Under the pieces are notes generated by a model, which saw nothing but the letters and a program-made list of their open reading frames with translations, did no database searches and had not been told where the DNA came from. Positions 13,291 to 41,928 of a stretch of 41,928 nucleotides of DNA are shown here, piece after piece. This DNA is from Octopus sinensis. Taxonomy: Eukaryota. The first letter of the stretch is position 1; each line of letters opens with the position of its first letter. The position numbers were made by a program, and so were the translations under genes. The stretch lies in contig NW_021835234.1 in the NCBI RefSeq assembly GCF_006345805.1, forward strand, positions 1 through 41,928, read 5' to 3'.

Positions 13291-13345
<55 letters not shown>

Positions 13346-14443: not shown

Positions 14444-14495
<52 letters not shown>

Positions 14496-14739: not shown

Positions 14740-14770
<31 letters not shown>

Positions 14771-16110: not shown

Positions 16111-16214
16111 CATAGAGAAACCTTGCATCTGTATGTCCGATGGTTCGTGCGTGCATGGTCGTGTGCCATTCGAGTGCGAACACAGACAGACACACACACA
16201 CACACATATATATA

Positions 16215-16545
16215 AACATATATACGACGGGATTCTTTCAGTTTCCTTTCACCAAATCCAATCACAAGGATTTGGTCGACCCGGGGCTACTTTAGAAGAC
16301 AATTGGACAAGATGCGAGGCAGTGTGAATGAAACTGAAACCATGTGGTTCGTAAGCAAACTACTTACCACATAGCCATTCGTGCGCCGATTTTCATATAT
16401 ACGACGGGCTTCTTTCAGTTTCCCTCTACCAACCCTACTCAGAATACATTGGTCGGCCCGGGGGTATAGTTGAATACACTTGCCGAAGGTGCCACGCTGT
16501 TGGATTGAATCCAGCACATTGAGGTTGGTGAGCAAACACTCTCAC
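16215..16545 (-). mobile_element. Two tandem SINE 5' halves
   Basis: Twice TTTCAGTTTCC...CCAA..C.ACTCA...TTTGGTCG.CCCGGGG.TA.., each followed by a reverse B-box region. Confidence 0.75.
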
Positions 16546-16989
16546 ACAATCGCGCGCGCAAATAGACACAGAGATGAAAGCACACATATTGGCTGACCCA
16601 CACACTCATGCAATTTCTTGGGAGTGTCACGGTTTTAAGGTCAACATATTTCAAACATAAAATAGCTTTGCATGTATCTATGTGCATGAGTGCGGAAGTG
16701 TGGGTTTTTGTGCGTGTGTGAGCACAGACCACACATACCCAAGGTGGTCGCATCGGCTAATGTGACACAACCGCGAAAGTCTGTTTCACCCAGACATGCA
16801 CATACAGATATACGTGTATATACCCACGCATGTATATGTAGTGTTTAAAACAAAAAAGAAACTGTAAGGGATGGAACGGGAGTTCTTTCCATTTTATTAA
16901 GAAAACTTGCATCTGTATGTGTGATAGTACGTGCGTGCATTCTCGTGTGCCCTTCGAGTGCGAACAACACACACACACACACATTTAAA

Positions 16990-17300
16990 CATATATACGA
17001 TGGGATACTTTCAGTTTCCTTCCACTAAATCCAATCACAAGGATTAGGTCGGCCCTGGGGTACAGTAGTAGACAATTGCATAAGATGACAGGCAGTGGGA
17101 GTGAACACCAAACCATGTACAACATAGCCATTCCTACGCCGGTAATCGTATATACGACGGGCTTCTTTCAGTTTCCCTCTACCAACTCCACTCAGAATAC
17201 TTTGGTCGGCCCAAGGCTATAGTTGAATACACTTATCGAAGGTGCAACGCTGTTGGTTTAAACTCAGCGCATTGCGGTTCGTGAGCAATCATTCTCACAG
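16990..17300 (-). mobile_element. Two tandem SINE 5' halves
   Basis: Reverse-complement core and head motifs occur twice. Paralog at ~27755-28010. Confidence 0.75.
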
Positions 17301-17605
17301 AAATGCGCGCGCAAATAGACACAGAACGTCATGGTTTTAATGTCAACATGTTTAAAACATAAATATCTACGAGTGTGTGAGCACAGTCCACCCATACCCA
17401 AGTTTGTTGCATTGTCTTATGGGACCCAGCCGCGAAAGTTCCGGACCCCATTAATGAACTCATTTGCATACAAACAATTAGGGCTCACCTTGAACTTGTC
17501 CAGTTAACAAACAGTAGTGTCTGAATGGGAATTAGCTTGCTTACCTACAAATGTTTTCGAGTTCTGTCCCACTGGGTGGCACGTTGGGCAAATGTCTTCT
17601 ACTAG

Positions 17606-17649
17606 CATATAGACTCGAGGCGATAATAACTATGTCTCGAGTCTATATG
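17606..17649. other. Perfect 14-bp inverted repeat (hairpin) at a SINE truncation
   Basis: CATATAGACTCGAG (17606-17619) / CTCGAGTCTATATG (17636-17649). Confidence 0.95.
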
Positions 17650-17714
17650 ATATAAATATTCCAAATCCACCACTCTCGCGTGGTTTTCTCCCAGTAAATA
17701 TAAACTAGATAGAT

Positions 17715-17900
17715 ATTTATATATATGTTTCTGTGTCCCCAAAACCGCTTGACAACCGATGCTGGTATTTTTTCACTCTAGTAACTTCGGGAAAAGACGA
17801 TCAATAAATAAATTCTAGACTGTCATAGAGTTAGTCCTAGTGTCGATTTGCTCTAGAAAATGCTGTGCTCCAGCATGGGCACAGTAAAATGACTAAACAA
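17715..17900 (+). mobile_element. SINE 3' half
   Basis: CCGCTTGACAACCGATGCTGGT...GTCGATTTGCTC...GTGCTCCAGCATGGGCACAGT. Paralogs at ~22195-22390 and ~31565-31760. Confidence 0.8.
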
Positions 17901-19824
17901 GGAAAAGCGTAAAAGTGTGTGTGTCACGTCTGCATAATATATTCTAGAGCTACTTCCCTAGGAAATTATAATTTAACAAAAGTAAAATAATTATATGTAA
18001 GGAAAGTAACTCTGGAAGATGTTATCTAGTTATCTCCCTTCCGAGTGTTAAATTCCTAGCATTTTATTTTATTATTGTTAAATTTTAATATTTAAGGGAA
18101 GGTAACTGTAGAAGATACTCTGTAGTTATCTCCCTAAAGTATGTAGTTATCGTAATATAGACTTTGTCGCTCTTTGACTCTTTCAGTTATTTCACTGTGA
18201 CCATGGTGGAGCACCGCCTTTAGTCAAGCAAATCAACCCCAGCAATTATTCTTTGTATGCCTATTACTTAACGTATAGGTCTCTTTTGCAGAACCGCTAA
18301 GTTACGGGGATGTAATGTTCGATGTACTGATTTAGTAGGTATTTATTTACTGTAAGAACTTCAATTATCATAAATTAGGGGCTAGGAAAAATACTAGAAA
18401 CTTTTTTGATATACTTATTGGGGCTCCTTGTGTGTGTGGGACTGTTTTTGTTTATGTGAGTGTGGGTATTTTCATTTCAGTGTTTGTGTGTGTGTGTGTG
18501 TGTGAGAGAGTGCTTTTTTTTCTGTGTGCGCGAGTGTGTGAGCGACTGAGTGTTTCTATTTGTTTGTGTGTGTGCGACACTTACAAATGCAGCAAGCACT
18601 TTGACCATTTCTAAGATACCCACATTTGAGATCACTAACTACTAAATCAAAATAAGTTCAATTTATTGCACCTTTAGTGACTTGAGATGTTGCTCATATT
18701 TTTCCCATGTGTCGACAATGTATTAAGTTCACAAGTGGATAAAAGAAATTCTCATGCTCGCGTGGAGGGGGCTGATATTCTAACTGCGAGTTCAAAGCAC
18801 CCAATGCCACTTTACATTCTGAATAAATTGTATGTTTGTGCTAGTTAGGGTTAGGGTTTTATGTGTGAGTGTGTAACTGCGTTTTCATTTCTGTGTGTGG
18901 GTGCGTATGTTTGTGTGTGTGTGTGTGTGTTTGTGCGTATGTTAGTGTGTGAGAGTTTGGATGTGTTACTGTATTTTTCATTTCTATTGTGTGTGTCTGT
19001 GTTTGTGCATGTGTAGGTATGTAACTGTTTTCATTTCTGTGTTTGTCCGCGTGTTTGAGTGTGTGAATATGTAGCCGTGTATTTTCATTTGTGTGTTTGT
19101 CTTTGTGCGTATGTGAGTGTTTTTGTGAGATTCTTTTTCAGTGTTTGTGTGCGTGGGACATTTTATATGTGTGTGTGTTTTGCTATTTTCATTTCAGTGT
19201 TTGTGTTTGTGAATGTTTTTTATTTTGTGTGTACGTTGTGTGAGCGACTGTGTTTTTATTCCTTTGTGTGTGTGTGCGACAATTACAGCTACAACAAACA
19301 CTTTAAGCATCTCCAAGATACCCACATTTGCAGATCCCTAAGTTCTAAATGAAAAGAAGTTAAATTTATTGCACCTTTAGTGACTTCAGATTTGCGAGTG
19401 TTAAGCACGCAATGCCTCCCGTATCTACATACCTGGATTGGCCATAATTGGCCTCATTCGGAGATATCTCGGGTGTGGAATATTTATAACTATAGAAGTT
19501 AACTTGTTACAGGTTTTGTTTATGGCTTAACTTTTGTAGATTTTGGGAAGTTCATAGATCTTAGTGGCTTTGCAGTGAAATCTAATCAAGCAATTTGTCT
19601 CCTTTTTTGTTAAATCGTGTTGGAACTGGTGGATAAGAGTAGACAGTTTTGTTATTACCTTCGAACGACTGTAGCTGTTGATGTTTTTACTGATACAGGT
19701 GTGTTTACTCCCTGTATTTTAGCGGTTCGGCAAAAGAGAACAAGTTAGAATAAATACTAGGCTTACAAAGAAGTGCTGCGGACGATGTGATCGACTAAAG
19801 GCGGCGCTCCAGTATTTTATTTAT

Positions 19825-19862
<38 letters not shown>

Positions 19863-20262
19863 TACAGATATACGCATATATACAAAGAAAACAAAAACAA
19901 AAAGAAACTTGATTATGTCATTATTACTTTATTACAGATATTACACATGAAACGTATTATATGAAATTATGGGGACGTAGACAGACTAGCGTCCGTTGTG
20001 TAGCATTGTTTGGGGACAAACAGACATACGCACACACACGTACACATATATATAAACATATATTGACTGCATTTTTCCAGTTTCCTTCCCCATATCCAAT
20101 CACAAGGCTTTGGTCGGCTCGGGGCTATAGTAGATTTTTCAAACGATGCTGGTGTGTTTCCTCCCTGTATTTCAGCGGCTCGGCAGAAAAGAATAAGTTA
20201 GAATGAATACTAGGCTTAGAAAGAATAAGTGCTGCTGACGATGTGCTCGAAGAAGATAGATT

Positions 20263-20320
<58 letters not shown>

Positions 20321-20340
20321 AGATATATCAGATATATATA

Positions 20341-22131
20341 AACTTAGATGTGTTTTCGACCAAAGATTGGTCCAGGCTATGTCTAACTTAATAGCACCAT
20401 TTAATAGGATTTTCGAATCCTGTTTAAGTCGAGGTTTGTTCAAGTAGTGAGTTCTTGTTGGGTGAGTTGTATCCAGTTTTTGTTCAAGTAGTGAGTTCTT
20501 GTTGGGTGAGTTGTATCCTATTATGGGTGGCTTATCTGGTATTCTTTGAAGGAATCTATCCAGACTCTGTTTGAAGTTGATGGGATCCTTTTCCTCTTTG
20601 ATCTCTCTTGAGACAATGTTAAATAGGGCAGGGCCTGTTGAGGAAAAGAAATTATGTTGCAGTGTACATGTATGTTGTCATCTTGAATTGGGCAGGGGAC
20701 GTATAGCTCGTGGTCCAAGTCTTGGATGAACCTTGAAGCTAATGTTTAGGTCGTTTGGGCATAGTTGGCGGTATATTTTCCACATCGTACAAATGATGTA
20801 CCGCTCACGGCGACGCTGGAGGGAGTAAAGTTTCAAGGCTTTACGGCGATCCCAATAATCGAGAGCAGCCATGCCTTCAATTCGTTTAGTGAGAGACCTC
20901 TGGGGTGACTCAATTCTGGAGATGTTTTGTCTTGTGTGAGACCACAGTGGGCAGCAGTATTCAAGGTGTGGCCGTACAAAGGAGGAAAAAAGTGGTTTGA
21001 TGACACCTTGTTCTCTGGACCGGAAAGTTCTTAAGATCCAGGAACTCATCCTACGAGCTATATCGACCTTCTTGTTGTGCACTCCAACTGAGATCGTCAT
21101 CAACAATTACACCCAGGTCTCTGATATTGTTAGAGGCTGTGAGCGGTTCCCCTGAAGGAAGAGAGTATGGCTGTTTTAGTGAGGAGTTTCTTCCAAAATG
21201 CATCAGCTCAAATTTTCCCTCGTTCAGTTGCATTTTGTTTCTGTCTGCCCATTGACTCACAGCATATAGATCAGACTGGAGTTGAGTTCGGTCTGCTTTT
21301 TCAATGACGATTTGCTGGAGCTTGGTGTCATCAGCAAATATTTTCACTTTGCAGTAATGTACGACACTGGAAAGGTCGTTTATGTAGATTATGAAGAGTA
21401 GCGGACCCAAGACAGTCCCCTGGGGGACACCGCTGGTGACTTTTGCTGGGCTTGAGTGGACTCCATCAACTACAACATGTGTTTTATTCGCCAGGAAATA
21501 CTTGATCCAGTGTAGAACTTTTCCACGGATTCCAACATTTGCCAATTTTGAGAGTAGGATATTATGGTCTACCCTGTCGAACGCTTTACTGAAGTCAAGA
21601 TATATGACATCAGAGTTCGAACCTGTTCCCAAGGCTTTGAGTACATCTTCAATGTGGTGTAAGAGCTGTGTTAGACAGTCCCTGCCTCACCGAAAGCCAT
21701 GCTGATTTGCATTTAGGAGTTTCTGGGTCTCCAGGAAGTCAGCCATCCTTGATCTTAACACTCTTTCAAACACTTTGATGATGTGGGAGGTGAGTGAGAT
21801 TGGGCGATAGTTGAGTGCGAGGGATCTGTTTCCCTGTTTGAAAACCGGGATGACTGACTGGGATAGAAACTGTTTTGGTATATAACCTGCATCTAACGAA
21901 TTTCTCCAGAGGTTGGTCAGTGGGACTGCAAGTTGGTGTTTACATTCCTTCAGGAGACTAGCAGGGAATCTATCAGGGCCTACAGCAGAGTAGTATTTGA
22001 CCTCATTTATTGCTGCTACGATGTCAGTGGGAGTGAAGGTTATGTCTGCAATTTTGTGTTGGAGTCATCTTCGTTCGCTTCTCTTACGTCAATATCAGTG
22101 GGAACACTAAAGACAGCAGTATTTTTTCTGC
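20341..22131 (-). mobile_element. 5'-truncated CR1/L2-group LINE (RT pseudogene)
   Basis: IPVFKQG...NYRPISLTSHIIKVFERV, NQHGFR*GRDC, IYLDFSKAFDRVDH, SGVPQGTVLGPLLF, FADDTK, VRPHLEYCCPLW, LYSLQRRRER. In-frame TGA at 21687-21689 plus frameshifts. Confidence 0.95.
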
Positions 22132-22419
22132 AATATATATATATAGAGAAACATGTATATACATATAGATATTTATATATGTATATGTGTGTATGTTTCG
22201 GTGTCTCCAAATCGCTTGACAACCAATGCCGATGTTCTTCACACACCTTAACTTATCCGTTCGGGAAAAGAAGACAACAGAATTAATACTAGACTGACGT
22301 AAATAAAAGTCCTAGTGTCGATTTGCTCTGGAAAAGGCTGTGCTCCAGCATTGGCACAGTGAAATGACTAAACACGGAAAAGAGTAAAGTGTATGCGTTA
22401 CGTCTGAATATTATATTGT

Positions 22420-22735
22420 AGAGTTAATTAGCTTCCATAATACATTTTGATAATAGTCGTAACGTAATTAAATGTAAGGGAGGTAACTTTTGAATATTTT
22501 TGAGTTATCTCCCATCTAGAGTTACTCCCCTTGCATATTATTAATTATTAAATTATAATATGCATGGTAAGTCACTCTACGAAGGAAGATAACTATAAAA
22601 TCTTTCAGAGTTACTTCCCTTAAATCTAATTAAATTACTATTACGTATTATTAAATTATGCTATTCAAGGGAAGTAACTCTAGAAAGGGAAACAGGTACA
22701 AAATTATGCAGAGTTACTTCACTTACATGTAATTA
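22420..22735. repeat. Palindromic GGGAAGTAACT cluster
   Basis: Perfect 15-bp IR AGAGTTACTTCCCTT (22607-22621) / AAGGGAAGTAACTCT (22667-22681) around an AT-rich spacer. Confidence 0.85.
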
Positions 22736-22744
22736 CATTACGAT

Positions 22745-22816
22745 TGGTGTTTGGGTTGGTGTTGGATTAGGGTTAGGGTCAGGGTCGGGGTTAGGTTGGG
22801 GTTAGGGTTAGTGTTA
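22745..22816 (+). repeat. Degenerate interstitial telomeric tract 1 (TTAGGG/TCAGGG/TTGGGG)
   Basis: TTAGGGTTAGGGTCAGGGTCGGGGTTAGGTTGGGGTTAGGGTTAG. Confidence 0.9.
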
Positions 22817-25800
22817 GCCTCGTTCACACATCATGCGTCCATACAAACAAGCCTCATTCACACATCATGCGTCCATACAAACATGCCTCGTTCACACATC
22901 ATGCGTCCATACAAACAAGCCTCGTTCACACATCATGCGTCCACACAAACAAGCCTCGTTCACACGTCATGCGTCCATACACGCCACGTTCACACATAAT
23001 GCGTCCACACAACAAGCCTCGTTCACACATAATGCGTCCACACAAACAAGCCTCGTTCACACATCGTGCGTCCATACACGCCTCGTTCACACATCATGCG
23101 TCCACACAAAGAAGCTTCGTTCACACATCATGCGTCCATTCAAACAAGCCTCGTTCACACATCATGCGTCCATACAAAGAAGCCTCGTTCACACATCATG
23201 CGTCCATACAAAGAAGCCTCGTTCACACATCATTCGTCCATACAAACAGGCCTCGTTCACACATCATGCGTCCATACATACACGCCTCGTTCACACATCA
23301 TGCGTCCACACAAACGAGCCTCGTTCACACATCATGCGTCAATTCAAACAAGCCTCGTTCACACATGCGTCCATTCAAACAAGGCTCGTTCACCCGTCAT
23401 GCGTCCATACAAACAAGCCTCGTTCACACATCATGCGTCCACACAAACAAGCCTCGTTCACACATCATGCGTCCATACATACACGCCTCGTTCACACATC
23501 ATGCGTCCACACAAACAAGCCTCGTTCACACATCGTGCGTCCATTCCAACAAGCCTCGTTCACACATGTGTTCATACAAAGAAGCCTCGTTCACACATCA
23601 TGCGTCTATACAAACAAGCCTCGTTCACACATCATTCGTCCATACAAACAGCCTCGTTCACACATCATGCGTCCATACATACACGCCTCGTTCACACATC
23701 ATGCGTCCACACAAACAAGCCTCCACACATCATGCGTCCACACAAGAAGCCTCGTTCACACATCATGCGTTCATACAAACAAGCACGTTCACCCCGTCAT
23801 GCGTCCATACAACAGGCCTCGTTCACACATCATGCGTCCATACAAACAAGCCTCGTTCACACATCATGCGTCCATACATACACGCCTCGTTCACACATCA
23901 TGCGTCCACACAAACAAGCCTCGTTCACACATCATGTGTCCATTCAAACAAGCCTCGTTCACACATCATGCGTCCAACAACCAAGCCTCGTTCACACTTT
24001 ATGCGTTCATACAAACAAGCCTCGTTCACACACTCATCATGCGTTCATGCAAACAAGCCTCGTTCACCGCCATGCGTTCATACAAACAAGGCTCGTTCAC
24101 CCGTCATGCGTCCATACAAACAAGCCTGGTTCATACATCATGCGTCCACACAAACAAGCCTCGTTCACACATCATGCGTCCACACAAACAAGCCTCGTTC
24201 ACACATCATGCGTCCATACACGCCTCGTTCACACATCATGCGTCCACACAAAGAAGACTCGTTCCCACATCATGCGTTCATACAAACAGGCCTCGTTCAC
24301 ACATCATGCGTCCACACAAACAAGCCTCGTTCACACATCATGCGTCCATACAAACAAGCCTCGTTCACACATCATGCGTTCATACAAACAAGCCTCGTTC
24401 ACACATCTTGCGTTCATACAAACAAGCCTCGTTCACACATAATGCGTTCATACATACACGCCTCGTTCACACATCATGCGTCCATACAAACAAGCCTCGT
24501 TCACACATCATGCGTCCATACAAACAAGCCTCGTTCACACATCATGCGTTCATACAAACAAGCCTCGTTCACACATCATGCGTCCATACAAACAAGCCTC
24601 GTTCACCCGTCATGCGTCCATACAAACAAGCCTCGTTCACACATCATGCGTCCATACAAATATGCCACGTTCACACATCATGCGTCCATACACGCCTCGT
24701 TCACACCTCATGCGTCCATATACACAAGCCTCGGTCACACATCATACGTCCATACACGCCTCGTTCACACATCATGCGTCCACACAAAGAAGCCTCGTTC
24801 ACACATCATGCGTACATTCAAACAAGCATCGTTCACATATCATGCGTCCACACATAGAAGCCTCCTTCACACATCATGCGTCCATAGAAAGAAGCCTCGT
24901 TCACACATCATGCGTCCATACACACAAGCCTCGTTCACACATCATGCGCCCATACACGCCTCGTTCACACACGCTTCCACACAAAGAAGCTTCGTTCATA
25001 CATCATGCGTCCATTCAAACAAGCCTCGTTCACACATCATGCGTTCATACAAACAAGGCTCGTTCACCCGTCATGCGTCCATACAAATATGCCTCGTTCA
25101 CACATCATGCGTTCATACAAACAAGCCTCGTTCACACATCATGCGTCCATACAAACAAGCCTCGTTCACACATCATGCGTCCATACATACACGCCTTGTT
25201 CACACATCATGCGTTCATACAAATAAGCCTCGTTCACACATCATGCGTCCATTCAAACAAGCCTCGTTCACCGTCATGCGTTCATACAAACAAGCCTCGT
25301 TCACACATCATGCGTCCATACAAACAAGCCTCGTTCACACATCATGCGTCCATACATACACGCCTCGTTCACACATCATGCGTTCATACAAACAAGCCTC
25401 GTTCACACATCATGCGTCCATACAAACAAGCCTCGTTCACCGTCATGCGTCCATACAAACAAGCCTCGTTCACCCGTCATGCGTTCATACAAACAGGCCT
25501 CGTTCACCCGTCATGTGTTCATATAAACAGGCCTCGTTCACACATCATGCGTCCATACAAACAAGCCTCGTTCACACATCATGCGTTCATACAAACAAGC
25601 CTCGTTCACCCGTCATGTGTTCATACAAACAAGCCTCGTTCACACATCATGCGTTCATACAAACAAGCCTCGTTCACACATCTTGCGTCCATTCAAACAA
25701 GCCTCGTTCACACATGCGTTCATACAAACAAGGCTCGTTCACCCGTCATGCGTCCATACAAACAAGCCTCGTTCACACATCATGCGTCCATACAAACAAG

Positions 25801-26428
25801 CTTCGTTCACACATCATGCGTCCATACAAACAGGCCTTGTTCACACATCATGCGTTCATACAAACAAGCCTCGTTCACACATCATGCGTCCATACAAACA
25901 AGCCTCGTTCACACATCATGCGTCCATACAAACAAACCTCGTTCACACATCATGCGTCCATACAAACAAGCCTCGTTCACCGTCATGCGTTCATACAAAC
26001 AAGCCTCGTTCACACATGCGTTCATACAAACAAGCCTCGTTCACACATCATGCGTCCATACAAACAAGCCTTGTTCACACATCATGCGTCCATAAAACAA
26101 GCCTCGTTCACCGTCATGCGTTCATACAAACAAGCTCGTTCACACCGTCATGCGTTCATACAAACAAGCCTCGTTCACACATCATGCGTTCATACAAACA
26201 AGCCTCGTTCACACATCATGCGTCATACAAACAAGCCTCGTTCAAACATGCGTTCATACAAACAAGCCTCGTTCACACATCATGCGTCCATACAAACAGG
26301 CCTCGTTCACACATCATGCGTCCATACAAACAAGCCTCGTTCACACATCATGCGTCCACACAAACAGGCCTCGTTCACACATCATGCGTCCATACACACA
26401 AGCCTCGTTCACACATGCGTCCATACAT
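22817..26428 (+). repeat. 34-bp satellite, consensus GCCTCGTTCACACATCATGCGTCCATACAAACAA, ~105-110 copies
   Basis: Period 34 (e.g. CACATCATGC at 22861 and 22895), with 30-32-bp deletion variants. Confidence 0.98.
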
Positions 26429-26440
26429 AGATGTTCATAC

Positions 26441-26828
26441 ATTCAGGGACATGTAATTCAGGGGCAGGTAATTAAGGGGCATGTAATTCAGGGGAAGGTA
26501 ATCCAGGGGCAGGTAATTATGGGGAAGGTAATTGAGGGGCAGGTAACTCAGGGTCAGGTAACTGAGGGGCAGGTAATTCAGGTGCATGTAATTCAGGAGC
26601 AGGTAATTCAGGGGCATGTAATTATGGGGAAGGTAATTCAGGGCAGATAATCCAGGGGCAGGTAAATCAGAGGAATATAATTCAGGGGCAGGTAATCCAG
26701 GGTTACGTAATTCAGGGGCAGGTAATTCAAGTGCATGTAATTCAGGGTCATATAACTCCGGGGCAGGTAATTCAGGTGCATGTAACTCAGGCAGGTAATT
26801 CAGGTGCATGTAACTCAGGGGCAGGTAA
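26441..26828 (+). repeat. 15-bp minisatellite, consensus ATTCAGGGGCAGGTA, ~26 copies
   Basis: Period 15. Gives spurious QGQVI / LNYLP repeat ORFs. Confidence 0.95.
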
Positions 26829-26914
26829 GGGTTGGGTTAGGGGTTGGGGTTGGTTGGGGTTGGGTTTGGGGTTGGGTTAGCGTTAGGGGTTTGGCGTTGG
26901 GTTAGGGTTAGGGT
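26829..26914 (+). repeat. Degenerate interstitial telomeric tract 2
   Basis: GGGTTGGGTTAGGGGTTGGGG...GGGTTAGGGTTAGGGT. Confidence 0.9.
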
Positions 26915-27390
26915 AATATACTCTTTCACTGTGACCATGGTGGAGCACCGCCTTTAGTCAAGCAAATCAACCCCAGGAATTATTCTTTGTATGCCTATTA
27001 CTTAATGTATAGGTCTCTTTTGCAGAACCGATAAGTTACGGGGACGTAATGTTCGATATACTGATTTAGTAGGTATTTATTTATTGTAATAATTTCAATT
27101 ATCATAAATTATGGGCTAGGAAAATACTAGAAACTTTTTTGATAGACCTATCGGGGCTCCTTGAGTGTGTGGGACTTTTTAATTATGTGAGTGTGGGTAT
27201 TTTCATTTCAGTGTTTGTGTGTGAGAGTGTTTTTATTTCTGTGTGCGCGAGTGTGTGAGCGACTGAGTGTTTCTATTTGTTTGTGTGTGTGCGACACTTA
27301 CAACTACAACAAACACTTTGACCATTTGTAAGATACCCACATTTGAGATCACTAAATACTAAATCAAAATGAGTTCAATTTATTGCACCT
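26915..27390 (+). repeat. Partial duplicon piece (SINE tail block to TG block)
   Basis: Matches 2215-2710, 18150-18670 and 29150-29690. Confidence 0.85.
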
Positions 27391-27484
27391 TTATATATAT
27401 ACACACACACACATGTATGTGTTTGTGTATTTATATGTCGTATATAGCGTCGTATATATATATATATATATATCTATATATATT

Positions 27485-27517
<33 letters not shown>

Positions 27518-27570
27518 GTATATATGTATATGTATGTATATATATATATATATACATACAGATATACGTG
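27390..27570. repeat. (TA)n compound microsatellite
   Basis: Direct inspection. Confidence 0.9.
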
Positions 27571-28708: not shown

Positions 28709-28790
<82 letters not shown>

Positions 28791-31450: not shown

Positions 31451-31490
<40 letters not shown>

Positions 31491-33172
31491 GAGAGAGACA
31501 GATCTATATATATAGAGAGAGAAACATGTATATACATATAGATATTTATATTTATGTATATGTGTGTATGTTTCGGTGTCCCTAAAACCGGTTGACAACC
31601 GATGCCGGTGTTTTTTACACTCCATTAACTTATCCGTTCGGGAAAAGAAGACCAACAGAATATATACTAGACTGACGTAAACAAAAGTCCTAGTGTCGAT
31701 TTGCTGAAGAAAAGGATGTGCATGGGCACAGTGAAATGACTAAACCAGGATAAGAGTAAAAGTAAATGTAAGGGAAGTAACTGCAAGATTTTGTAGTTAT
31801 CTCCCTTTCTAGTAACTCTACAAAGAAAGATAACTCCAAAATCTTTCAGAGTTACCTCCCTCACATATACTGATAATTGTTAAATATACTAGGCAAGAGA
31901 AGTAACTCTAGAAAAGGAGATAATTACAAAATCTTCCAGAGTTACTTCCCTTACATGTATCTGTTTGTGTACGTAAAACTGTTTTTATTTGTGTGTGTGT
32001 GTGTCGGTAGTTTCATTTCAGTGTTTGTGTTTGTGTGATTGTTTTTATTTCTGTGTGTATGTTTGTGGGAGCCTATGTGCGGTTTTTTTCGCTTGTGTGT
32101 GTGCGACAATTACAGCTACAACAAACACTTTGAGCATCTCCAAGATACCCACATTTGCAGATCACTAGCTTCTAAATGAAAAGAAGTTCAATTTATTGCG
32201 ACTTCAGATTTGCGATTGTTAAGCACCCAATGCTCCCTGTATCTACATACCTAGTACTGACTTTGCAGTGAAATCTAGTCAAGCAATTTGTCTCTTTTTT
32301 TGTTAAATCGTGTTGGAACTGGTGGATAAGCCTAGACAGTTTGGTCATTATATTCGATTGACTGTAGTTGTTCATGTTTTAACCGATGTTTTACTCCCTG
32401 TATTTTAGCGGTTCGGCAAAAGAGAACAAGTTAGAATAAATACTATGCTTACAACAAATAAGTGCTGCGGACGATGTTCTCGACTAAAGGCGGCGCTCCA
32501 GTATTTATATATATATATATATTTACATAGATATACGTGTATATACCCACATACGCATATAAAACAAAAAAGAAACTTTGATTATGTCATTATTACTTTA
32601 TTACAGATATTACAACATGAAACGTATTATATGACGTTAGGGAAGTAACTCTAGGAGATATTTTCTGCTATCTCCCTAGTGAACAGGTCATAGACTTTTC
32701 TCGTTATTTACTCTTTTACTCTCATTTACTTGTTTCAGTCATTTGACTGTGGGCATGTTGCAGCACCACCTTCAGCCGAGCATATCGACCCCAGGACTTA
32801 TTCTTTGTAGGCCTAGTACTTATTTTTTCAGTCTCTTTCGCTGAACCTCTAAGTTATGGGGAGGTAAACAGACTAGCATCCATTGTGTAGCAATGTTTGG
32901 GGACAAAGACACACGCACACATATATAAACATATATATGACTGGAGTTTTCCAGATTCCTTCCACCATATCCAATCACAAGGCTTTGGTTGGCTCGGGGC
33001 TATAGTAGATTTTTCAAACGATGCTGGTGTGTTTTCCTCCCTGTATTTCAGCGGCTCGGCAGAAAAGAATAAGTTAGAATAAATACTAGGCTTAGAAAGA
33101 ATAAGTGCTGCTGACGATGTGCTCGAAGGTAGATTGGTATATATAATATATATATTTATAAAGATATATCAG

Positions 33173-33203
<31 letters not shown>

Positions 33204-33365
33204 CATGTATATACATATAGACATTTATATATATGTATATGTGTGTATATTTCTGTGTCTCCAAAACCGCTTGACAACAAATGCCGGTGTTTTTTACACT
33301 CCATTAACTTATCCGTTCGGGAAAAGAAGACCAACAGAATTAATACTAGACTGACGTAGATAAGA
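27570..33365 (+). repeat. Large duplicon copy Y, with internal tandem re-duplication (~30290-31690 vs ~32100-33365)
   Basis: Collinear with 16780-22744. Near-identical spurious ORFs at 19961, 31173 and 32897 mark three copies of one segment. Confidence 0.9.
28392..28710 (+). mobile_element. Two tandem SINE 5' halves
   Basis: Same pair as 1510-1835 and 13156-13508. Confidence 0.85.
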
Positions 33366-33690
33366 GTTAGGGTTAGGGTTGGGTTAGGGTTAGGGTTGGG
33401 GTTGGGTTAGGGTTAGGGTTAGGTTGGTTAGGGTTAGGGTTAGGGTTAGGGTTAGGGTTTGGGGTTGGGTTAGGGTTGGGGTTGGGTTAGGGTTAGGGTT
33501 GGTTAGGTTAGGGTTAGGGTTAGGGTTGGTTAGGTTAGGGTTTGGGTTGGGGTTAGGGTTAGGGTTGGGGTTGGGTTAGGGTTGGGTTAGGGTCAGGGTT
33601 AGGGTTAGGGTTAGGGTTAGGGTTGGGGTTGGGTTAGGGTCAGGGTAGGGTTAGGGTTGGGGTTGGGGTTAGGGTTGGGTTAGGGTTAGG
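33366..33690 (+). repeat. Interstitial telomeric tract 3, ~55 hexamer equivalents of TTAGGG with TTGGGG/TTGGG/TCAGGG/TTAGG variants
   Basis: Direct inspection. G-rich strand is plus, as in tracts 1 and 2. Confidence 0.98.
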
Positions 33691-36600
33691 TGCGCTCGTA
33701 GGTACATCAGAACAAGGTATATACCTAGTAAGTCTGTAGCTTGTGCAGAGTCCGGTGCTCCCGTAGGTACATCAGAACAAGGTAAATACCTAGTAAGTCT
33801 GTACCTTGTGCAGAGTCCGGTGCTCCCGTAGATACATCAGAAAAAGGTAAATACCTAGTAAGACTTTAGATTGTGCAGAATCCAGTGCTCTCGTAGGTAC
33901 ATCAGAACAAGGTAAATACCTAGTAAGTCTGTAGCTTGTGCAGAATCCGCTGCTCCCGTAGGTACATCAGAGCAAGGTAAATACCTAGTCAGTCTGTATC
34001 TTGTGCAGAATCCGGTGTTCCCGTAGGTACATCAGAACAAGGTAAATACCTAGTCAGTCTGTATCTTGTGCAGAGTCCGGTGCCCCCGTATGTACATCAG
34101 AACAAGGTAAATAGCTAGTAAGTCTGTAGCTTGTGCAGAATCCGGTGCTCCCGAAGGTACATCAGAACCAGGTAAATACCTAGTAAGTCTGTAGCTTGTG
34201 CACAATCCGGTGCTCCCGTAGGTACATCAGAACAAGGTAAATACCTAGTAAGTCTGTAGCTTGTGCAGAGACCGGTGCTCCCGTAGGTACATCAGAACAA
34301 GGTAAATACCTAGTAAGTCTGTACCTTGTGCAGAGTCCGGTGCTCCCGTAGGTACATCAGAAAAAGGTAAATACCTAGTAAGTCTGTAGCTTGTGCAGAA
34401 TCCGGTGCTCTCGTAGGTACATCAGAACAAGGTAAATACCTAGTAAGTCTGTAGCTTTTGCAGAATCCGGTGCTCCCGTAGGTACATCAGAACAAGGTAA
34501 ATACCTAGTAAGTCTGTAGCTTGTGCAGAATCCGGTGTTCCCGTAGGTACATCAGAGCAAGGTAAATACCTAGTCAGTCTGTAGCTTGTGCAGAGTCCGG
34601 TGCTCCCGTAGGTACATCAGAACAAGGTAAATACCTAGTAAGTCTGTAGCTTGTGCAGAGTCTGGTGCTCCCGTAGGTACATCAGAACAAGGTAAATACC
34701 TCGTAAGACTTTAGCTTGTGCAGAATCCGGTGCTCCTGTAGGTACATCAGAACAAGGTAAATACCTTGTAAGTCTGTAGCTTGTGCAGAATCCGGTGCTC
34801 CCGTATGTACATCAGACCAAGGTAAATACCTAGTAAGTCTGTAGCTTGTGCACAATCCGGTGCTCCCGTAGGTACATCAGAACAAGGTAAATACCTAGTA
34901 AGTCTGTAGCTTGTGCAGAGACAGGAGTTCCCGTAGGTACATCAGAACAAGGTAAATACCTAGTAAGTCTCTAGCTTGTGCAGAATCCGGTGCTCCCGTA
35001 GGTACATCAGAACAAGGTAAATACCTAGTAAGTCTGTAGCTTGTGCAGAGACCGGTGCTCCCGTAGGTACATCAGAACAGGTAAATACCTGTAAGTCTGT
35101 AGCTTTTGCAGAGACAGGAGTTCCCGTAGGTACATCAGACAAGGTAAATACCTAGTAAGTCTGTAGCTTTTGCAGAGACAGGAGTTCCCGTAGGTACATC
35201 AGAACAATGTTAATAACTAGTAAGTCTGTAGCTTGTGCAGAATCCGGTGCTCCCGTAGGTACATCAGAACAAGGTTAATACCTAGTAAGTCTGTAGCTTG
35301 TGCAGAATCCGGTGTTCCCGTAGGTACATCAGAGCAAGGTAAATACCTAGTCAGTCTGTATCTTGTGCAGTGTCCGGTGCTCCCGTAGGTACATCAGAGC
35401 AAGGTAAATACCTAGTCAGTCTGTATCATGTGCAGAGTCCGGTGCTCCCGTATGTACATCAGAACAAGGTAAATAGCTAGTAAGTCTGTAGCTTGTGCAG
35501 AGTCCGGTGCTCCCGTAGGTACATCAGAACAAGGTAAATACCTAGTAAGTCTGTAGCTTGTGCAGAGTCCGGTGCTCCCGTATGTACATCAGAACAAGGT
35601 AAAAACCTAGTAAGTCTGTAGCTTGTGCAGAATCCGGTGTTCCCTTCGGTACATCAGAGCAAGGTAAATACCTAGTCAGTCTGTATCTTGTGCAGAGTCC
35701 GGTGCTCCCGTAGGTACACCAGAGCAAGGTAAATACCTAGTAAGTCTGTAGCTTTTGCAGAATCCGGTGCTCCCGTAGGTACATCAGAACAAGGTAAATA
35801 CCTAGTAAGTCTGTAGCTTGTGCAGATTCCGGTACTCCCGTAGGTAAATCAGAACAAGGTAAAAACCTAGTAAGTCTGTAGCTTGTGCAGAGACCGGTGC
35901 TCCCGTAGGTACATTAGAACAAGGTAAATACCTAGTAAGTCTGTAGCTTGTGCAGAGACCGGTGCTCCCGTAGGTACATCAGAACAAGGTAAATACCTTG
36001 TAAGTCTGTAGCTTGTGCAGAGTCCGGTGCCCCCATAGGTACATCAGAACAAGGTAAATAACTAGTAAGTCTGTACCTTGTGCAGAGTCCAGTGCTCCCG
36101 TAGGTATATCAGAAAAAGGTTAATACCTAGTAAGTATTTAGCTTGTGCAGAGTCCGATGCTCCCGTAGGTACATCAGAACAAGGTAAATACCTAGAAAAT
36201 TTGTACCTAGTGCAGAGTCCGGTGCTCCCGTAGGTACATCAGAAAAAGGTAAATACCTAGTAAGTCTTTAGCTTGTGCAGAATCCGGTGCTATCGTAGGT
36301 ACATCAGAACAAGGTAAATACCTGGTGAGTCTGTAGCTTGTGCAGAATCCGCTGCTCCCGTAGGTACATCAGAACAAGGTAAATACCTTGTAAGTCTGTA
36401 GCTTGTGCAGAGTCCGGTGCTCCCGTATGTACATCAGAACAAGGTAAAAACCTAGTAAGTCTGTAGCTTGTGCAGAATCCGGTGTTCCCTTCGGTACATC
36501 AGAGCAAGGTAAATACCTTGTAAGTCTGTAGCTTGTGCAGAGTCTGGTGCTCCAGGAGGTACAGCAGAACTAGGTGAATACCCAGTAAGTCTGTAGCTTG

Positions 36601-39600
36601 TGCAGAGTCTGGTGCTCCAGTAGGTACAGCAGAACTAGGTAAATACCCAGTAAGTCTAGCTTTTGCAGAGACAGGAGATCCCGTAGGGACATCAGAACAA
36701 GGTAAATACCTAGTAAGTCTGTAGTTTGTGCAGAATCCGGTGCTCCCGTAGGTACATCAGAACAAGGTTAATACCTAGTAAGTCTGTAGCTTGTGCAGAA
36801 TCCGGTGTTCCCGTAGGTACATCAGAGCTAGGTAAATACCTAGTCAGTCTGTATCTTGTGCAGTGTCCGGTGCTCCCGTAGGTACATCAGAGCAAGGTAA
36901 ATACCTAGTCAGTCTGTATCATGTGCAGAGTCCGTTGCTCCCGTATGTACATCAGAACAAGGTAAATAGCTAGTAAGTCTGTAGCTTGTGCAGAGTCCGG
37001 TGCTCCCGTAGGTACATCAGAACAAGGTAAATACCTAGTAAGTCTGTAGCTTGTGCAGAGTCCGGTGCTCCCGTATGTACATCAGAACAAGGTAAAAACC
37101 TAGTAAGTCTGTAGCTTGTGCAGAATCCGGTGTTCCCTTCGGTACATCAGAGCAAGGTAAATACCTAGTCAGTCTGTATCTTGTGCAGAGTCCGGTGCTC
37201 CCGTAGGTACACCAGAGCAAGGTAAATACCTAGTAAGTCTGTAGCTTTTGCAGAATCCGGTGCTCCCGTAGGTACATCAGAACAAGGTAAATACCTAGTA
37301 AGTCTGTAGCTTGTGCAGAGTCCGGTGCTCCCGTATGTACATCAGAACAAGGTAAATACCTAGTAAGTCTGTAGCTTGTGCACAATCCGGTGCTCCCGTA
37401 GGTACATCAGAACAAGGTAAATACCTAGTAAGTCTGTAGCTTGTGCAGAGACAGGAGTTCCCGTAGGTACATCAGAACAAGGTAAATACCTAGTAAGTCT
37501 CTAGCTTGTGCAGAATCCGGTGCTATCGTAGGTACATCAGAACAACGTAAATACCTGGTGAGTCTGTAGCTTGTGCAGAATCCGCTGCTCCCGTAGATAC
37601 ATCAGAACAAGGTAAATACCTTGTAAGTCTGTAGCTTGTGCAGAATCCGGTGTTCCCGTAGGTACATCAGAGCAAGGTAAATACCTAGTCAGTCTCTATC
37701 TTGTGCAGAGTCTGGTGCTCCAGTAGGTACAGCAGAACTAGGTAAATACCCAGTAAGTCTGTAGCTTGTGCAGAGTCCGGTGCTCCCGTAGGTACATCAG
37801 AACAAGGTAAATACCTAGTAAGTCTGTAGCTTGTGCAGAGTCCGGTGCTCCCGTATGTACATCAGAACAAGGTAAATACCTAGTAAGTCTGTAGCTTGTG
37901 CAGAGTCTGGTGCTCCCGTAGGTACATCAGAACAGGTAATATCCTCGTAGACTTTAGCTTGTGCAGAATCCGGTGCTCCCGTATGTACATCAGAACAAGG
38001 TAAATACCTAGTAAGTTTGTAGCTTTATGCAGAATCCGGTGCTCTCGCAGGTACATCAGAACAGGGTAAATACCTAGTAAGTCTGTAGCTTGTGCAGAAT
38101 CCGGTGCTCCCGTAGGTACATCAGAACAAGATAAATAACTAGTAAGTCTGTAGCTTGTGCAGAAACCGGTGCTCCCGTAGGTACATCAGAACAAGGTAAA
38201 TACCTAGTAAGTCTGTAGCTTGTGCAGAGACCGGTGCTCCCGTAGGTACATCAGAACAAGGTAAATACCTAGTAAGTCTGTAGCTTCTGCAGAGACCGGT
38301 GCTCCCGTAGGTACATCAGAACAAGATAAATACCTAGTAAGTCTGTAGCTTGTGCAGAAACCGGTGCTCCCGTAGGTACATCATAGCAAGATAAATACCT
38401 AGTAAATCTTTAGCTTGTGCAGAATCCGGTGCTCCCGTAGGTACATCAGAACAAGGTTTATACCTAGTAAGTCTGTAGCTTGTGCAGAGTCCGGTGCTCC
38501 CGTAGGTACATCAGAACAAGGTAAATACCTAGTAAGTCTGTACCTTGTGCAGAGTCCGGTGCTCCCGTAGGTACATCAGAACAAGGTAAATACCTAGTAA
38601 GTCTTTAGCTTGTGCAGAATCCGGTGCTCCCTTAGGTACATCAGAACAAGGTAAATACCTAGTAAGTTTGTAGCTTGTGCAGAGACCGGTGCTCCCGTAG
38701 GTACATAAGAACAAGGTAAATACCTAGTATGTCTGTAGCTTTTGCAGAGACCGGTGCTCCCGTAGGTACATCAGAACAAGGTAAATACCTAGTAAGTCTG
38801 TATCATGTGCAGAGTCCGGTGCCCCCATAGGTACATCAGAACAAGGTAAATATTTAGTAAATCTTTAGCTTGTGCAGAATCCGGTGCTCCCGTATGTACA
38901 TCAGAACAAGGTATATACCTAGTAAGTCTGTAGCTTGTGCAGAGTCCGGTGCTCCCGTAGGTACATCAGAACAAGGTAAATACCTAGTCAGTCTGTAGCT
39001 TGTGCAGAGTCCGCTGCTCCCGTAGGTACATCAGAGCAAGGTAAAAACCTAGTCAGTCTGTAGCTTGTGCAGAGTCCGGTTTTCCCGTAGGTACATCAGA
39101 GCAAGGTAAATACCTAGTCAGTCTGTAACTTGTGCAGAGTCCGGTGCTCCTGTAGGTACATCAGAACTAGGTAAATACCTAGTAAGTCTGTAGCTTGTGC
39201 AGAGTCCGGTGCTCCCGTAGGTACATCAGAACAAGGTAAATACCTAGTAAGTCTGTAGCTTGTGCAGAGTCCGGTGCTCCCGTAGGTACATCGGAACAAG
39301 GTAAATAACTCGTAAGTCTGTAGCTTGTGCAGAATCCGGTGCTCCTGTAGGTACATCAGAACAAGGTAAATACCTAGTAAGTCTGTAGCTTGTGCAGAAT
39401 CCGCTGCTCCCGTAGGTACATCAGAACAAGGTAAATACCTAGTAAGTCTGTAGCTTGTGCAGAATCCGGTGTTCCCGTAGGTACATCAGAACAAGGTAAA
39501 TACCTAGTCAGTCTGTATCTTGTGCAGAGTCCGGTGCCCCCGTATGTACATCAGAACAAGGTAAATAGCTAGTAAGTCTGTAGCTTGTGCAGAGTCCGGT

Positions 39601-41928
39601 GCTCCCGTATGTACATCAGAACAAGGTAAATAGCTAGTAAGTCTTTAGATTGTGCAGAATCAGGTGCGCTCGTAGGTACATCAGAACAAGGTATATACCT
39701 AGTAAGTCTGTAGCTTGTGCAGAGTCCGGTGCTCCCGTAGGTACATCAGAACAAGTTAAATACCTAGTAAGTCTGTAGCTTGTGCAGAATCCGGAGTTCC
39801 CGCAGGTACATCAGAGCAATGTAAATACCTAGTCAGTCTGTATCTTGTGCAGAGTCCGGTGCTCCCGTAGGTACATCAGAGCAAGGTAAATACCTCGTAA
39901 GTCTGTAGCTTGTGCAGAGTCCGGTGCTCCCGTATGTACATCAGAACAAGGTAAATAGCTAGTAAGTCTTTAGATTGTGCAGAGACCGGTGCTCCCGTAG
40001 GTACATCAGAACAAGGTAAATATCTAGTAAGCCTGTACCTTGTGAAGAGTCCGGTGCTCCCGTAGGTACATCAGAACAAGGTAAATACCTAGTAAGACTG
40101 TATCTTGTGCAGAGACCGGTGCTCCCGGAGGTACATCAGAAAAAGGTAAATACCTAGTAAGTCTTTAGCTTGTGCAGAATCCGGTGCTCTCGTAGGTACA
40201 TCAGAACAAGATAAATACCTAGTAAGTCTGTAGCTTTTGCAGAATCCGCTGCTCCCGTAGGTACATCAGAACAAAGTAAATACCTAGTAAGTCTGTAGCT
40301 TGTGCAGAATCCGGTGTTCCCTTCGGTACATCAGAGCAAGGTAAATACCTAGTCAGTCTGTAGCTTGTGCAGAGTCCGGTGCTCCCGTAGGTACATCAGA
40401 GCAAGTAAATACCTAGTAAGTCTGTAGCTTTTGCAGAATCCGGTGCTCCCGTAGGTACATCAGAACAAGGTAAATACCTAGTAAGTCTGTAGCTTGTGCA
40501 GAGTCCGGTGCTCCCGTAGGTACATCAGAACAAGGTAAATACCTAGTAAGTCTGTAGCTTGTGCAGAATCCGGTGCTCCCGTAGGTACATCAGAACAAGG
40601 TAAATACCTAGTAAGTCTGTAGCTTGTGCAGAGTCCGGTGCTCCCGTATGTACATCAGAAAAGGTAAATACCTAGTAAGTCTGTAGCTTGTGCAGAATCC
40701 GGTGCTCTCGTAGGTACATCAGAACAAGGTAAATACTTGTAAGTCTGTAGCTTGTGCAGAATCCGGTGCTCCCGTAGGTACATCAGAAAAAGGTAATACC
40801 TAGTAAGTCTGTAGCTTGTGCGAATCCGGTGCTCTCGTAGGTACCTCAGAACAAGGTAAATAACTAGTAGTCTGTAGCTTGTGCAAATCCGCTGCTTCCC
40901 GTAGGTAACATCAGAACAAGGTAAATACCTAGTAAGTCTGTAGCTTGTGCAGAGACCGGTGTGCTCCCGTAGGTACATCAGAACAGTAAATAACCTTGTA
41001 AGTCTGTAGCTTGTGCAGAGTCCGGTGCCCCCATAGGTACATCAGAACAAGGTAAATACTAGTAAGTCTGTACCTTGTGCAGAGTCCGTTGCTCCCGTAG
41101 GTATATCAGAAAAGGTAAATACCTAGTAAGTATTTAGCTTGTGCAGAGTCCGATGCTCCCGTAGGTACATCAGAACAAGGTAAATACCTAGAAAATTTGT
41201 ACCTAGTGCAGAGTCCGGTGCTCCCGTAGGTACATCAGAAAAAGGTAAATACCTAGTAAGTCTTTAGCTTGTGCAGAATCCGGTGCTATCGTAGGTACAT
41301 CAGAACAAGGTAAATACCTGGTGAGTCTGTAGCTTGTGCAGAATCCGCTGCTCCCGTAGGTACATCAGAACATGGTAAATAACTCGTAAGTCTGTAGCTT
41401 GTGCAGAATCCGGTGCTCCTGTAGGTACATAAGAACAAGGTAAATACCTAGTAAGTCTGTAGCTTGTGCAGAATCCGCTGCTCCCGAAGGTACATCAGAA
41501 CAAGGTAAATACCTAGTAAGTCTGTAGCTTGTGCAGAATCCGGTGTTCCCGTAGGTACATCAGAGCAAGGTAAATACCTAGTCAGTTTGTATCTTGTGCA
41601 GAGTCCGGTGCTCCCGTATGTACATCAGAACAAGGTAAATAGCTAGTAACTCTGTAGCTTGTGCAGAGTCCGGTGCTCCCGTAGGTACATCAGAACAAGG
41701 TAAATAACTAATAAGTCTTTAGCTTGTGCGGAATCCGGTGCTCTCGTAGGTACATCAGAACAAGGTAAATACCTAGTAAGTCTGTAGCTTTTGCAGAATC
41801 CGGTGTTCCCGTAGGTACATCAGAACAAGGTAAATACCTAGTCAGTCTGTATCTTGTGCAGAGTCCGGTGCCCCCGTATGTACATCAGAACAAGGTAAAT
41901 AGCTAGTAAGTCTGTAGCTTGTGCAGAG
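33689..41928 (+). repeat. 65-bp satellite, consensus GGTGCTCCCGTAGGTACATCAGAACAAGGTAAATACCTAGTAAGTCTGTAGCTTGTGCAGA(G/A)TCC, >=~126 copies, continues past the window end
   Basis: Period 65 (ATACCTAGTA at 33721 and 33786). High monomer identity throughout. Confidence 0.99.

What the first reader, a model, noticed from the sequence alone, without database searches (positions are those of the whole stretch)
16780..41928. Layered chromosome end: repeated duplicon - TTAGGG seed - captured satellite units
Seen: two collinear ~6 kb duplicon copies (16780-22744, 27570-33365) each end in a TTAGGG-type tract. Each tract is fused directly to a different satellite (34 bp, 65 bp). All telomeric tracts have the G-strand on plus. 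Established: co-oriented G-rich tracts point toward the chromosome end, and molluscs use TTAGGG. Inference: these are stacked fossil telomeres. An end was capped with TTAGGG, then extended by copying a satellite or duplicon via microhomology, and capped again. That would be recombination-based end elongation acting alongside telomerase, which I do not know to be described in cephalopods.
Basis: partly seen in the sequence, partly recalled or inferred. Interest (0 to 1): 0.75.

Follow-up and report, generated by a model that had tools for sequence, protein, structure and literature searches.

The report
Relic telomeres between duplicated end blocks
Three short, decayed telomere tracts, all pointing the same way, sit at the seams between duplicated segments and satellite arrays; this patchwork is well known from human and ape chromosome ends, so it is real but ordinary in kind, seen here in what looks like a cephalopod.

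Summary
They lie at the seams between four co-oriented blocks: duplicon copy A, a 34-bp plus 15-bp satellite block, a duplicon fragment plus copy B, and a 65-bp satellite that runs off the window.

Paralogue alignments show that the blocks proximal to the first and third islands are cut at arbitrary, non-homologous points. The blocks distal to all three islands start abruptly, with only 1-2 nt of overlap. This fits relic telomeres: an end is healed by telomerase, then buried when another terminal block is added.

The same grammar is established for human subtelomeric duplicon boundaries, for great-ape StSat caps and, from memory, for yeast Y' arrays.

Three points are not supported:
- "Each duplicon ends in TTAGGG". 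At least three further partial copies upstream have no tract.
- Microhomology-driven copying. The overlaps are too short to tell copying from end joining.
- A terminal location. No tool could place the window on a chromosome.

Transposon-tail and break-repair-insertion readings were tested and rejected. Verdict: a new member of a known kind, of moderate interest.

The parts
1426..3105 (+). Partial duplicon copy c1, with no telomere tract
   Evidence: 89-94% identical to 17903-19095 and 28308-30111.
12739..16572 (+). Tandem partial duplicon copies c2, c2a, c2b and c3, joined to each other and to copy A without any telomere tract
   Evidence: Self-BLAST chains. Identity is 90-96% in the shared 310-bp segment.
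16800..22745 (+). Duplicon copy A, cut 5 bp before the end of a 103-bp repeat unit
   Evidence: plus TRF row 22544-22745.
18844..18858 (+). Seed GTTAGGGTTAGGGTT inside the duplicon, directly before a TG-rich minisatellite. The same seed sits at 2885-2899 and 29861-29875.
   Evidence: Invariant in the three-copy alignment and located by 8-mer scan.
20335..22135 (-). 5'-truncated LINE reverse-transcriptase fragment inserted into a (TA)n/(GA)n microsatellite of copy A. The site is empty in copy B.
   Evidence: RVT_1 E=7.5e-23; homologues; insertion site compared.
22440..22745 (.). Inverted-repeat cluster prone to hairpins, immediately proximal to tel1. A plausible break site.
   Evidence: Seven inverted-repeat pairs. 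DNA fold -58.8 kcal/mol against -20.7 for shuffles, z = -10.3.
22746..22817 (+). tel1: a 72-bp degenerate telomere-like island, G strand on +
22816..26427 (+). 34-bp satellite, about 108 units at 88% match, C-rich on +
   Evidence: No similarity to the rest of the window.
26441..26828 (+). 15-bp satellite (ATTCAGGGGCAGGTA), about 26 units
26829..26913 (+). tel2: an 85-bp island rich in TTGGG/TTGGGG that ends in two perfect TTAGGG
26914..27393 (+). Duplicon fragment that starts at an arbitrary internal point of the unit (equivalent to about 18165 in copy A)
   Evidence: Alignment of seven copies. It is 92-95% identical to the other copies.
27554..33366 (+). Duplicon copy B plus a second partial unit (31962-33366). 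It is cut in the middle of a SINE-like module.
   Evidence: Paralogues A 22310, B 31690 and A 17829 run on through the break point.
33367..33690 (+). tel3: a 324-bp telomere-like island with a 17-bp higher-order period and an internal duplication of about 150-185 bp
33689..41928 (+). 65-bp satellite, at least 127 units at 90% match, running off the window
   Evidence: No similarity to the rest of the window.

Best explanation
The right-hand 25 kb is a subtelomere-type patchwork. It holds four co-oriented blocks, separated by three internalised relic telomeres.

Most likely history, in three steps that happened at least three times:
1. The chromosome end broke or eroded inside a block. At tel1 the break lies at the edge of a hairpin-prone inverted-repeat cluster.
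2. Telomerase healed the end by adding TTAGGG repeats onto a 1-2 nt G/T match.
3. A further terminal segment was later attached distal to the now short telomere. The most likely route is translocation of another chromosome tip by end joining, with the tip bringing its own telomere. Less likely is break-induced or rolling-circle copying. The attached segment was either a satellite array or a duplicon-bearing tip.

Once buried, each tract was no longer maintained by telomerase. It decayed into a variant-rich island of 70-325 bp, and tel3 also duplicated internally.

The duplicon copies also multiplied on their own, by local tandem duplication that left no telomere tracts.

Shown: the block structure, the truncations, the co-orientation and the short junction overlaps. 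Inferred: healing by telomerase, the joining mechanism, and that the chromosome end lies to the right of the window.
For: - All telomere-type sequence is on the + strand and none on the - strand.
- Every tract has a discontinuity on both sides.
- tel3 starts inside a module that is intact in three paralogues, at a shared GT.
- tel1 starts inside a 103-bp unit next to a strongly folding inverted-repeat cluster, z = -10.3.
- The block after tel2 begins at an internal point of the unit.
- The two duplicon-to-telomere junctions are about 435 bp apart in unit coordinates, so the tracts were added independently and not duplicated with the unit.
- The satellites are unrelated to the duplicon and to each other.
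- Tract sizes and variants (TTGGGG, TCAGGG; 72-324 bp) match the human internal islands. Those are mostly 150-200 bp, reach 823 bp, sit at duplicon boundaries, point toward the telomere and carry the same variants (PMC2323237).
- Great-ape caps show segmental duplications interleaved with a 32-bp satellite (PMC3371704).
Against: - The window could not be placed on a chromosome, so 'subtelomeric' is inferred from the grammar alone.
- Co-orientation of three tracts has a chance probability of only 0.25.
- Duplicon copies are about 91-95% identical to one another with no proximal-distal gradient, so the order of events cannot be read from divergence.
- No paralogues at other chromosome ends could be examined. 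Every outside search for the window's own repeats and proteins came back empty: sat34 ORF protein search, encoding-contig look-ups and metagenome scans.
- Misassembly cannot be excluded without reads.
Confidence: 0.58

Rival explanations
1. Each capped end was lengthened by templated copying, either break-induced replication or rolling circle on satellite circles. Copying was primed from the telomeric 3' end through microhomology, and the end was then recapped. This would be a germline ALT-like route working alongside telomerase.
For: - Two tracts are followed directly by long homogeneous tandem arrays.
- A small-scale version exists inside the duplicon: GTTAGGGTTAGGGTT followed by a TG-rich minisatellite.
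- All six junctions show 1-2 nt of overlap, where a simple null gives at least 1 nt at 44% of junctions.
- Copy B and the fragment are paralogues of proximal copies on the same stretch, so templates were nearby.
Against: - Overlaps of 1-2 nt are typical of end joining and of telomerase priming, and they do not show templated copying.
- No donor-recipient identity gradient is seen.
- If chromosome tips are largely satellite, a captured tip would often begin inside a satellite without any copying.
- Upstream duplicon copies multiplied without telomere tracts.
Confidence: 0.15
2. The structure records real relic telomeres, but the locus is now interstitial. Examples would be an old chromosome end buried by fusion or inversion, or heterochromatin rich in satellites and interstitial telomeric sequence.
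For: - The tracts are short and decayed.
- The satellites are about 10-12% diverged.
- The window ends in satellite and not in a terminal telomere.
- Nothing places the window on a chromosome.
Against: Three stacked, co-oriented tracts interleaved with duplicons form the pattern that PMC2323237 describes for human subtelomeric duplicon boundaries. I did not compare it against descriptions of fusion-site or pericentromeric telomere-like blocks.
Confidence: 0.15
3. Assembly chimera. Reads from different repeat-rich ends were joined through telomere-like or satellite sequence.
For: Every seam lies in low-complexity or repeated sequence, and such regions are hard to assemble (PMC13218726 notes this for cephalopods).
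Against: - The tracts are short and have individual variant patterns that a long read would span easily.
- All are co-oriented.
- The junction flanks are unique enough to align cleanly to paralogues.
Confidence: 0.07
4. The tracts belong to mobile elements or to break repair. Either they are telomere-like 3' tails or target sites of retroelements (HeT-A/TART, SART/TRAS, Athena types), or they are short telomeric repeats that telomerase inserted while an internal double-strand break was repaired.
For: A LINE reverse-transcriptase fragment lies 600 bp from tel1 in the antisense orientation. A GIY-YIG-like remnant lies at 11624-11980.
Against: - The two duplicon-to-telomere junctions are at non-homologous unit positions, so there is no fixed element end.
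- The LINE is an ordinary insertion into a microsatellite, with an empty site in copy B.
- The flanks of each tract are not contiguous in any paralogue, unlike break-repair insertions (PMC7215372).
Confidence: 0.04

Closest known systems
Human subtelomeric duplicon patchworks with internal (TTAGGG)n-like islands (Ambrosini et al. 2007, PMC2323237; the tip-translocation model cited there)
   Same: - Short, variant-rich telomere-like islands (TTGGGG, TCAGGG) lie at duplicon boundaries.
- Islands and duplicons are co-oriented.
- Paralogues are about 90-96% identical.
- There is no simple divergence gradient with distance from the end.
   Different: - Here two of the four blocks are short-unit satellites and not duplicons.
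- The scale is smaller, with 6-kb units.
- The taxon is a probable cephalopod.
- The terminal location and paralogues at other ends are untested.
Chimpanzee and gorilla subterminal caps: the 32-bp StSat satellite interleaved with hyper-expanded segmental duplications (Ventura et al. 2012, PMC3371704)
   Same: Short-unit satellite arrays (34 bp here, 32 bp there) alternate with copies of a locally amplified duplicon.
   Different: The passages I read do not describe telomere islands at every seam. The sequences are unrelated. Copy numbers here are known only for one 42-kb window.
Saccharomyces Y' elements separated by internal TG1-3 tracts, amplified in type I survivors (from my own knowledge, not checked here)
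   Same: A subtelomeric element is repeated in tandem with short telomere tracts in between, all in the same orientation. This is the classic example of recombination-based end extension.
   Different: In yeast the tracts sit at the same element boundary in every copy. Here the junctions are at different unit positions, and several tandem copies have no tract.
Telomere-associated retroelements: HeT-A/TART, SART/TRAS, Athena/Terminons (from my own knowledge)
   Same: They form layered ends in which telomere repeats alternate with inserted units.
   Different: The blocks here carry no element-defined ends and no reverse transcriptase of their own. This reading was tested and not met.

Membership tests
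Subtelomeric duplicon patchwork with internal telomere-like islands (human type) | Internal (TTAGGG)n-like islands co-localise with block or duplicon boundaries | tested here: met
   All three islands have unrelated sequence on their two sides, and the paralogue alignments show truncation points.
Subtelomeric duplicon patchwork with internal telomere-like islands (human type) | Islands are short and variant-rich, resembling proximal telomere sequence | tested here: met
   Lengths of 72, 85 and 324 bp. Perfect TTAGGG makes up 22-55% of each tract. Variants include TTGGG, TTGGGG and TCAGGG. Compare PMC2323237.
Subtelomeric duplicon patchwork with internal telomere-like islands (human type) | Islands and duplicons are co-oriented, with the G strand pointing to the chromosome end | tested here: inconclusive
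   Co-orientation is met: everything is on +, and no - strand 8-mers exist. The direction of the chromosome end is unknown.
Subtelomeric duplicon patchwork with internal telomere-like islands (human type) | Location within the distal part of a chromosome, with paralogues at other chromosome ends | not testable with these tools
   No eukaryotic genome collection could be searched by DNA. Every outside search for the window's own repeats and proteins came back empty.
Telomere-specific retrotransposon array | Units have a fixed element end abutting the telomere repeats, and the family encodes a reverse transcriptase | tested here: not met
   The junctions are about 435 bp apart in unit coordinates. 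The only reverse transcriptase is a truncated LINE inserted in a microsatellite, with an empty site in copy B.
Short interstitial telomeric sequences inserted during double-strand-break repair | The flanks of the tract are contiguous in a copy that lacks the tract | tested here: not met
   In the paralogues the sequence runs on into duplicon sequence, not into the satellite found after the tract. The model is from PMC7215372.
Recombination-based telomere elongation (ALT / yeast survivor type) | Templated copying of subtelomeric or satellite units onto telomere ends, seen as homology or long microhomology at junctions and donor-copy relationships | tested here: inconclusive
   Only 1-2 nt of overlap at each junction. 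The identities among copies are star-like.

The most novel reading that the evidence does not exclude
In this animal, germline chromosome ends are repeatedly lengthened by copying satellite arrays or duplicons straight onto a short telomeric 3' end, by rolling circle or break-induced replication. Telomerase recaps each new end. On this reading, satellite arrays are born at telomere seeds, and the layered structure records an ALT-like pathway operating beside telomerase in a cephalopod.
Probability: 0.12. Interest if true: 0.6.

Novelty: new member of a known kind. Interest (0 to 1): 0.35.

Why it matters
No sequence-level description of a cephalopod chromosome-end region turned up in the searchable literature. 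The only experimental telomere datum cited there is TTAGGG by FISH in one octopus.

If the locus is terminal, it shows that the vertebrate-style subtelomere dynamic also operates in a lophotrochozoan. That dynamic is break, heal, add another tip, and bury the old telomere.

There is also a practical point. Internal TTAGGG islands up to 324 bp long, followed by kilobases of satellite, can mislead telomere-motif-guided scaffolding and 'telomere-to-telomere' checks in cephalopod assemblies. The Sepia assembly, for example, used a TTAGGG motif option (PMC13218726).

Tried and rejected
1. Placing the window or finding sister loci all failed:
- Exact-protein look-ups of the 1187-aa satellite ORF and of the reverse-transcriptase ORF.
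- A protein search with the 34-bp satellite ORF.
- Metagenome scans for the 65-bp and 34-bp units.

2. The satellites as derivatives of the duplicon or of each other. No similarity beyond 10-12-mers.

3. Higher-order structure in the satellites. None found.

4. The block from tel1 through the satellites to tel2 as one insertion into a continuous duplicon copy. Rejected for two reasons:
- The fragment after tel2 is 92-95% identical to the young copies, whereas the module before tel1 is only about 76% identical to its counterpart.
- Copy B shows that this module is not followed by the fragment's sequence.

5. A transposon tail or target-site origin of the tracts. Rejected.

6. Break-repair insertion of the tracts. 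Rejected.

7. Rfam and tRNA scans to classify the SINE-like modules. Nothing found.

8. The 15-bp satellite as a telomere derivative. By eye only 9 of 15 positions match, so I did not pursue it.

Full report
**1. The observation**

Tandem Repeats Finder reports:
- a 34-bp satellite (22816-26427, 108 units, 88% match);
- a 15-bp satellite (26441-26828, 26 units);
- a 65-bp satellite (33689-41928, 127 units, 90% match, running off the window);
- three telomere-type hexamer tracts.

TTAGGGx3 with up to one mismatch occurs 15 times, always on the + strand, against none in 100 shuffles. No telomere 8-mer occurs on the - strand anywhere in the window.

Reading the junctions and breaking the tracts into units gives:
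- tel1, 22746-22817: 72 bp, very degenerate.
- tel2, 26829-26913: 85 bp, rich in TTGGG/TTGGGG, ending in two perfect TTAGGG.
- tel3, 33367-33690: 324 bp, with 30 perfect TTAGGG plus TTGGG, TTGGGG and TCAGGG. It has a 17-bp higher-order period and an internal duplication of about 150-185 bp.

**2. The duplicon**

Self-BLAST shows a family, not just a pair.
- Copy A (16800-22745) and copy B (27554-33365) are collinear and about 92-95% identical over about 2.4 kb, with patchy flanks.
- Partial copies also lie at 1426-3105, 12739-16000, 16097-16572 and 26914-27393.
- All copies are in direct orientation. They are 90-96% identical to one another, with no proximal-distal gradient.
- The upstream copies abut each other and copy A with no telomere tract, so the unit also multiplies by plain local tandem duplication.
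- Copy A carries a 1.8-kb 5'-truncated LINE reverse-transcriptase fragment on the minus strand (RVT_1 E=7.5e-23). It is inserted into a (TA)n/(GA)n microsatellite whose site is empty in B.
- Copy B carries an additional partial unit: 30153-31960 resembles 31962-33358.
- The unit itself is built from older SINE-like and palindromic modules that are 75-85% identical and occur in both orientations.

**3. Junction anatomy**

This is the key evidence.

Aligning the end of A, the middle of B, the end of B and an internal paralogue shows that tel3 starts in the middle of a module that runs on intact in three other copies. B reads ...GACGTAGATAAGAG|TTAGGG, where the paralogues read ...GACGTAAATAAAAGTCCTAG..., so the shared bases are GT.

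tel1 starts 5 bp before the end of a 103-bp repeat unit. This is about 435 bp further along the unit than the tel3 break. The two tracts were therefore added independently at different break points. They were not inherited with the unit.

The 300 bp just proximal to tel1 form an inverted-repeat cluster with seven pairs. It folds as single-stranded DNA at -58.8 kcal/mol against -20.7 for shuffles, z = -10.3. This is a plausible fragile site.

After tel2, the sequence begins at an arbitrary internal point of the duplicon...TTAGGG|TAATATAC..., where six paralogues continue upstream.

The satellites have no similarity to the duplicon or to each other. They are plain monomeric arrays.

Overlaps at the six telomere-tract junctions are 1-2 nt each. 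A simple null gives at least 1 nt at 44% of junctions. Six of six is therefore mildly suggestive of microhomology use. It is what end joining and telomerase priming produce, and it is far too short to demonstrate templated copying.

**4. What it is**

Read from left to right, the layers are:
- duplicon A, then tel1;
- the 34-bp and 15-bp satellites, then tel2;
- the duplicon fragment, (TA)n and duplicon B, then tel3;
- the 65-bp satellite.

Each tract begins where the block before it is truncated. Each tract ends where an unrelated block begins. The best explanation is a series of former chromosome ends. An end was healed by telomerase and later buried when another terminal segment was attached, which left a short decaying island.

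I favour tip translocation by end joining for the attachment step, as proposed for human subtelomeres. I place templated copying (break-induced or rolling circle) second. The sequence alone cannot separate them.

A small echo exists inside the duplicon. The seed GTTAGGGTTAGGGTT is conserved at the homologous site in three copies, directly before a TG-rich minisatellite. It may be an older, nearly erased layer.

**5. Rivals tested**

- A mobile element with a telomere-like tail or target site. Rejected, because the junctions are at non-homologous unit positions and the only reverse transcriptase is an ordinary microsatellite insertion.
- Telomerase insertion during internal break repair. Rejected, because the flanks of each tract are not contiguous in any paralogue (model in PMC7215372).
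- The tel1-satellites-tel2 stretch as a single insertion into one duplicon copy. Rejected on identity levels and on the structure of copy B.
- Still open: an interstitial position (a buried former end) and an assembly chimera. Neither can be tested without a chromosome-scale map or reads.

**6. Comparison with what is known**

Ambrosini et al. [quoted passage not shown] These islands are mostly 150-200 bp, reach 823 bp, and carry TGAGGG, TCAGGG and TTGGGG variants. That grammar is essentially the one seen here.

Ventura et al. (PMC3371704) describe chimpanzee and gorilla caps as hyper-expanded segmental duplications interspersed with a 32-bp satellite.

Yeast Y' arrays with internal TG1-3 tracts are the recombinational classic (my own knowledge).

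What is new is the taxon.
- The best named hit of the LINE reverse transcriptase is Argonauta hians at 63% identity, which fits a cephalopod.
- The library holds no sequence-level account of cephalopod subtelomeres.
- TTAGGG is the only experimentally determined cephalopod telomere motif.

**7. Verdict**

- Observation: confirmed, with amendments.
- Interpretation: partly supported. Relic stacked telomeres, yes. Microhomology-driven copying and a terminal position, not shown.
- Novelty: a new member of a known kind.
- Interest: moderate (0.35).
- Most novel reading not excluded: satellite arrays are seeded by copying onto telomeric 3' ends, in an ALT-like germline route. I give it about 0.12.

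Noticed in passing
window 11624-11980 (-): A 119-aa ORF with 60 homologues in the representative library (best E=6e-21). Pfam GIY-YIG is weak in the ORF itself (E=0.049) and in two homologues (6e-4 and 3e-3). It is probably the remnant of a GIY-YIG nuclease domain, possibly from a Penelope-like element. No reverse transcriptase lies next to it.
   Followed up: partly
window 6243-6611 (-): Tc1/mariner-type transposase fragment (HTH_Tnp_Tc3_2, E=9e-5, below Pfam's cut-off).
   Followed up: partly
window 20335-22135 (-): A 5'-truncated, frame-shifted LINE reverse-transcriptase fragment in duplicon copy A. The insertion site is empty in copy B at about 31440-31510. The best named relative is from Argonauta hians at 63% identity.
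   Followed up: yes
window 8605-8787 and 10346-10523: Direct repeats 81% identical flank a GC-rich stretch of about 1.5 kb (GC 0.48 against about 0.35 around it). It might be a small LTR-type element. No protein family matched the ORFs inside it.
   Followed up: no
window 2885-2899, 18844-18858, 29861-29875: GTTAGGGTTAGGGTT is conserved at the homologous site of three duplicon copies, immediately before a TG-rich minisatellite. It may be a nearly erased older telomere layer.
   Followed up: partly
window 22867-26430 (+): The 34-bp satellite keeps an open reading frame of 1187 codons, because 3 x 34 bp carries no stop codon in that frame. It is a trap for gene callers. It has no protein homologues.
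   Followed up: yes
window 17942-18091, 22457-22745, 28977-29107, 31811-31959, 13816-13938: A palindromic module (GGGAAGTAACTCT ... AGAGTTACTTCCC) of about 100 bp recurs in both orientations within the duplicon copies. It could be a MITE-like element. One cluster abuts tel1.
   Followed up: partly
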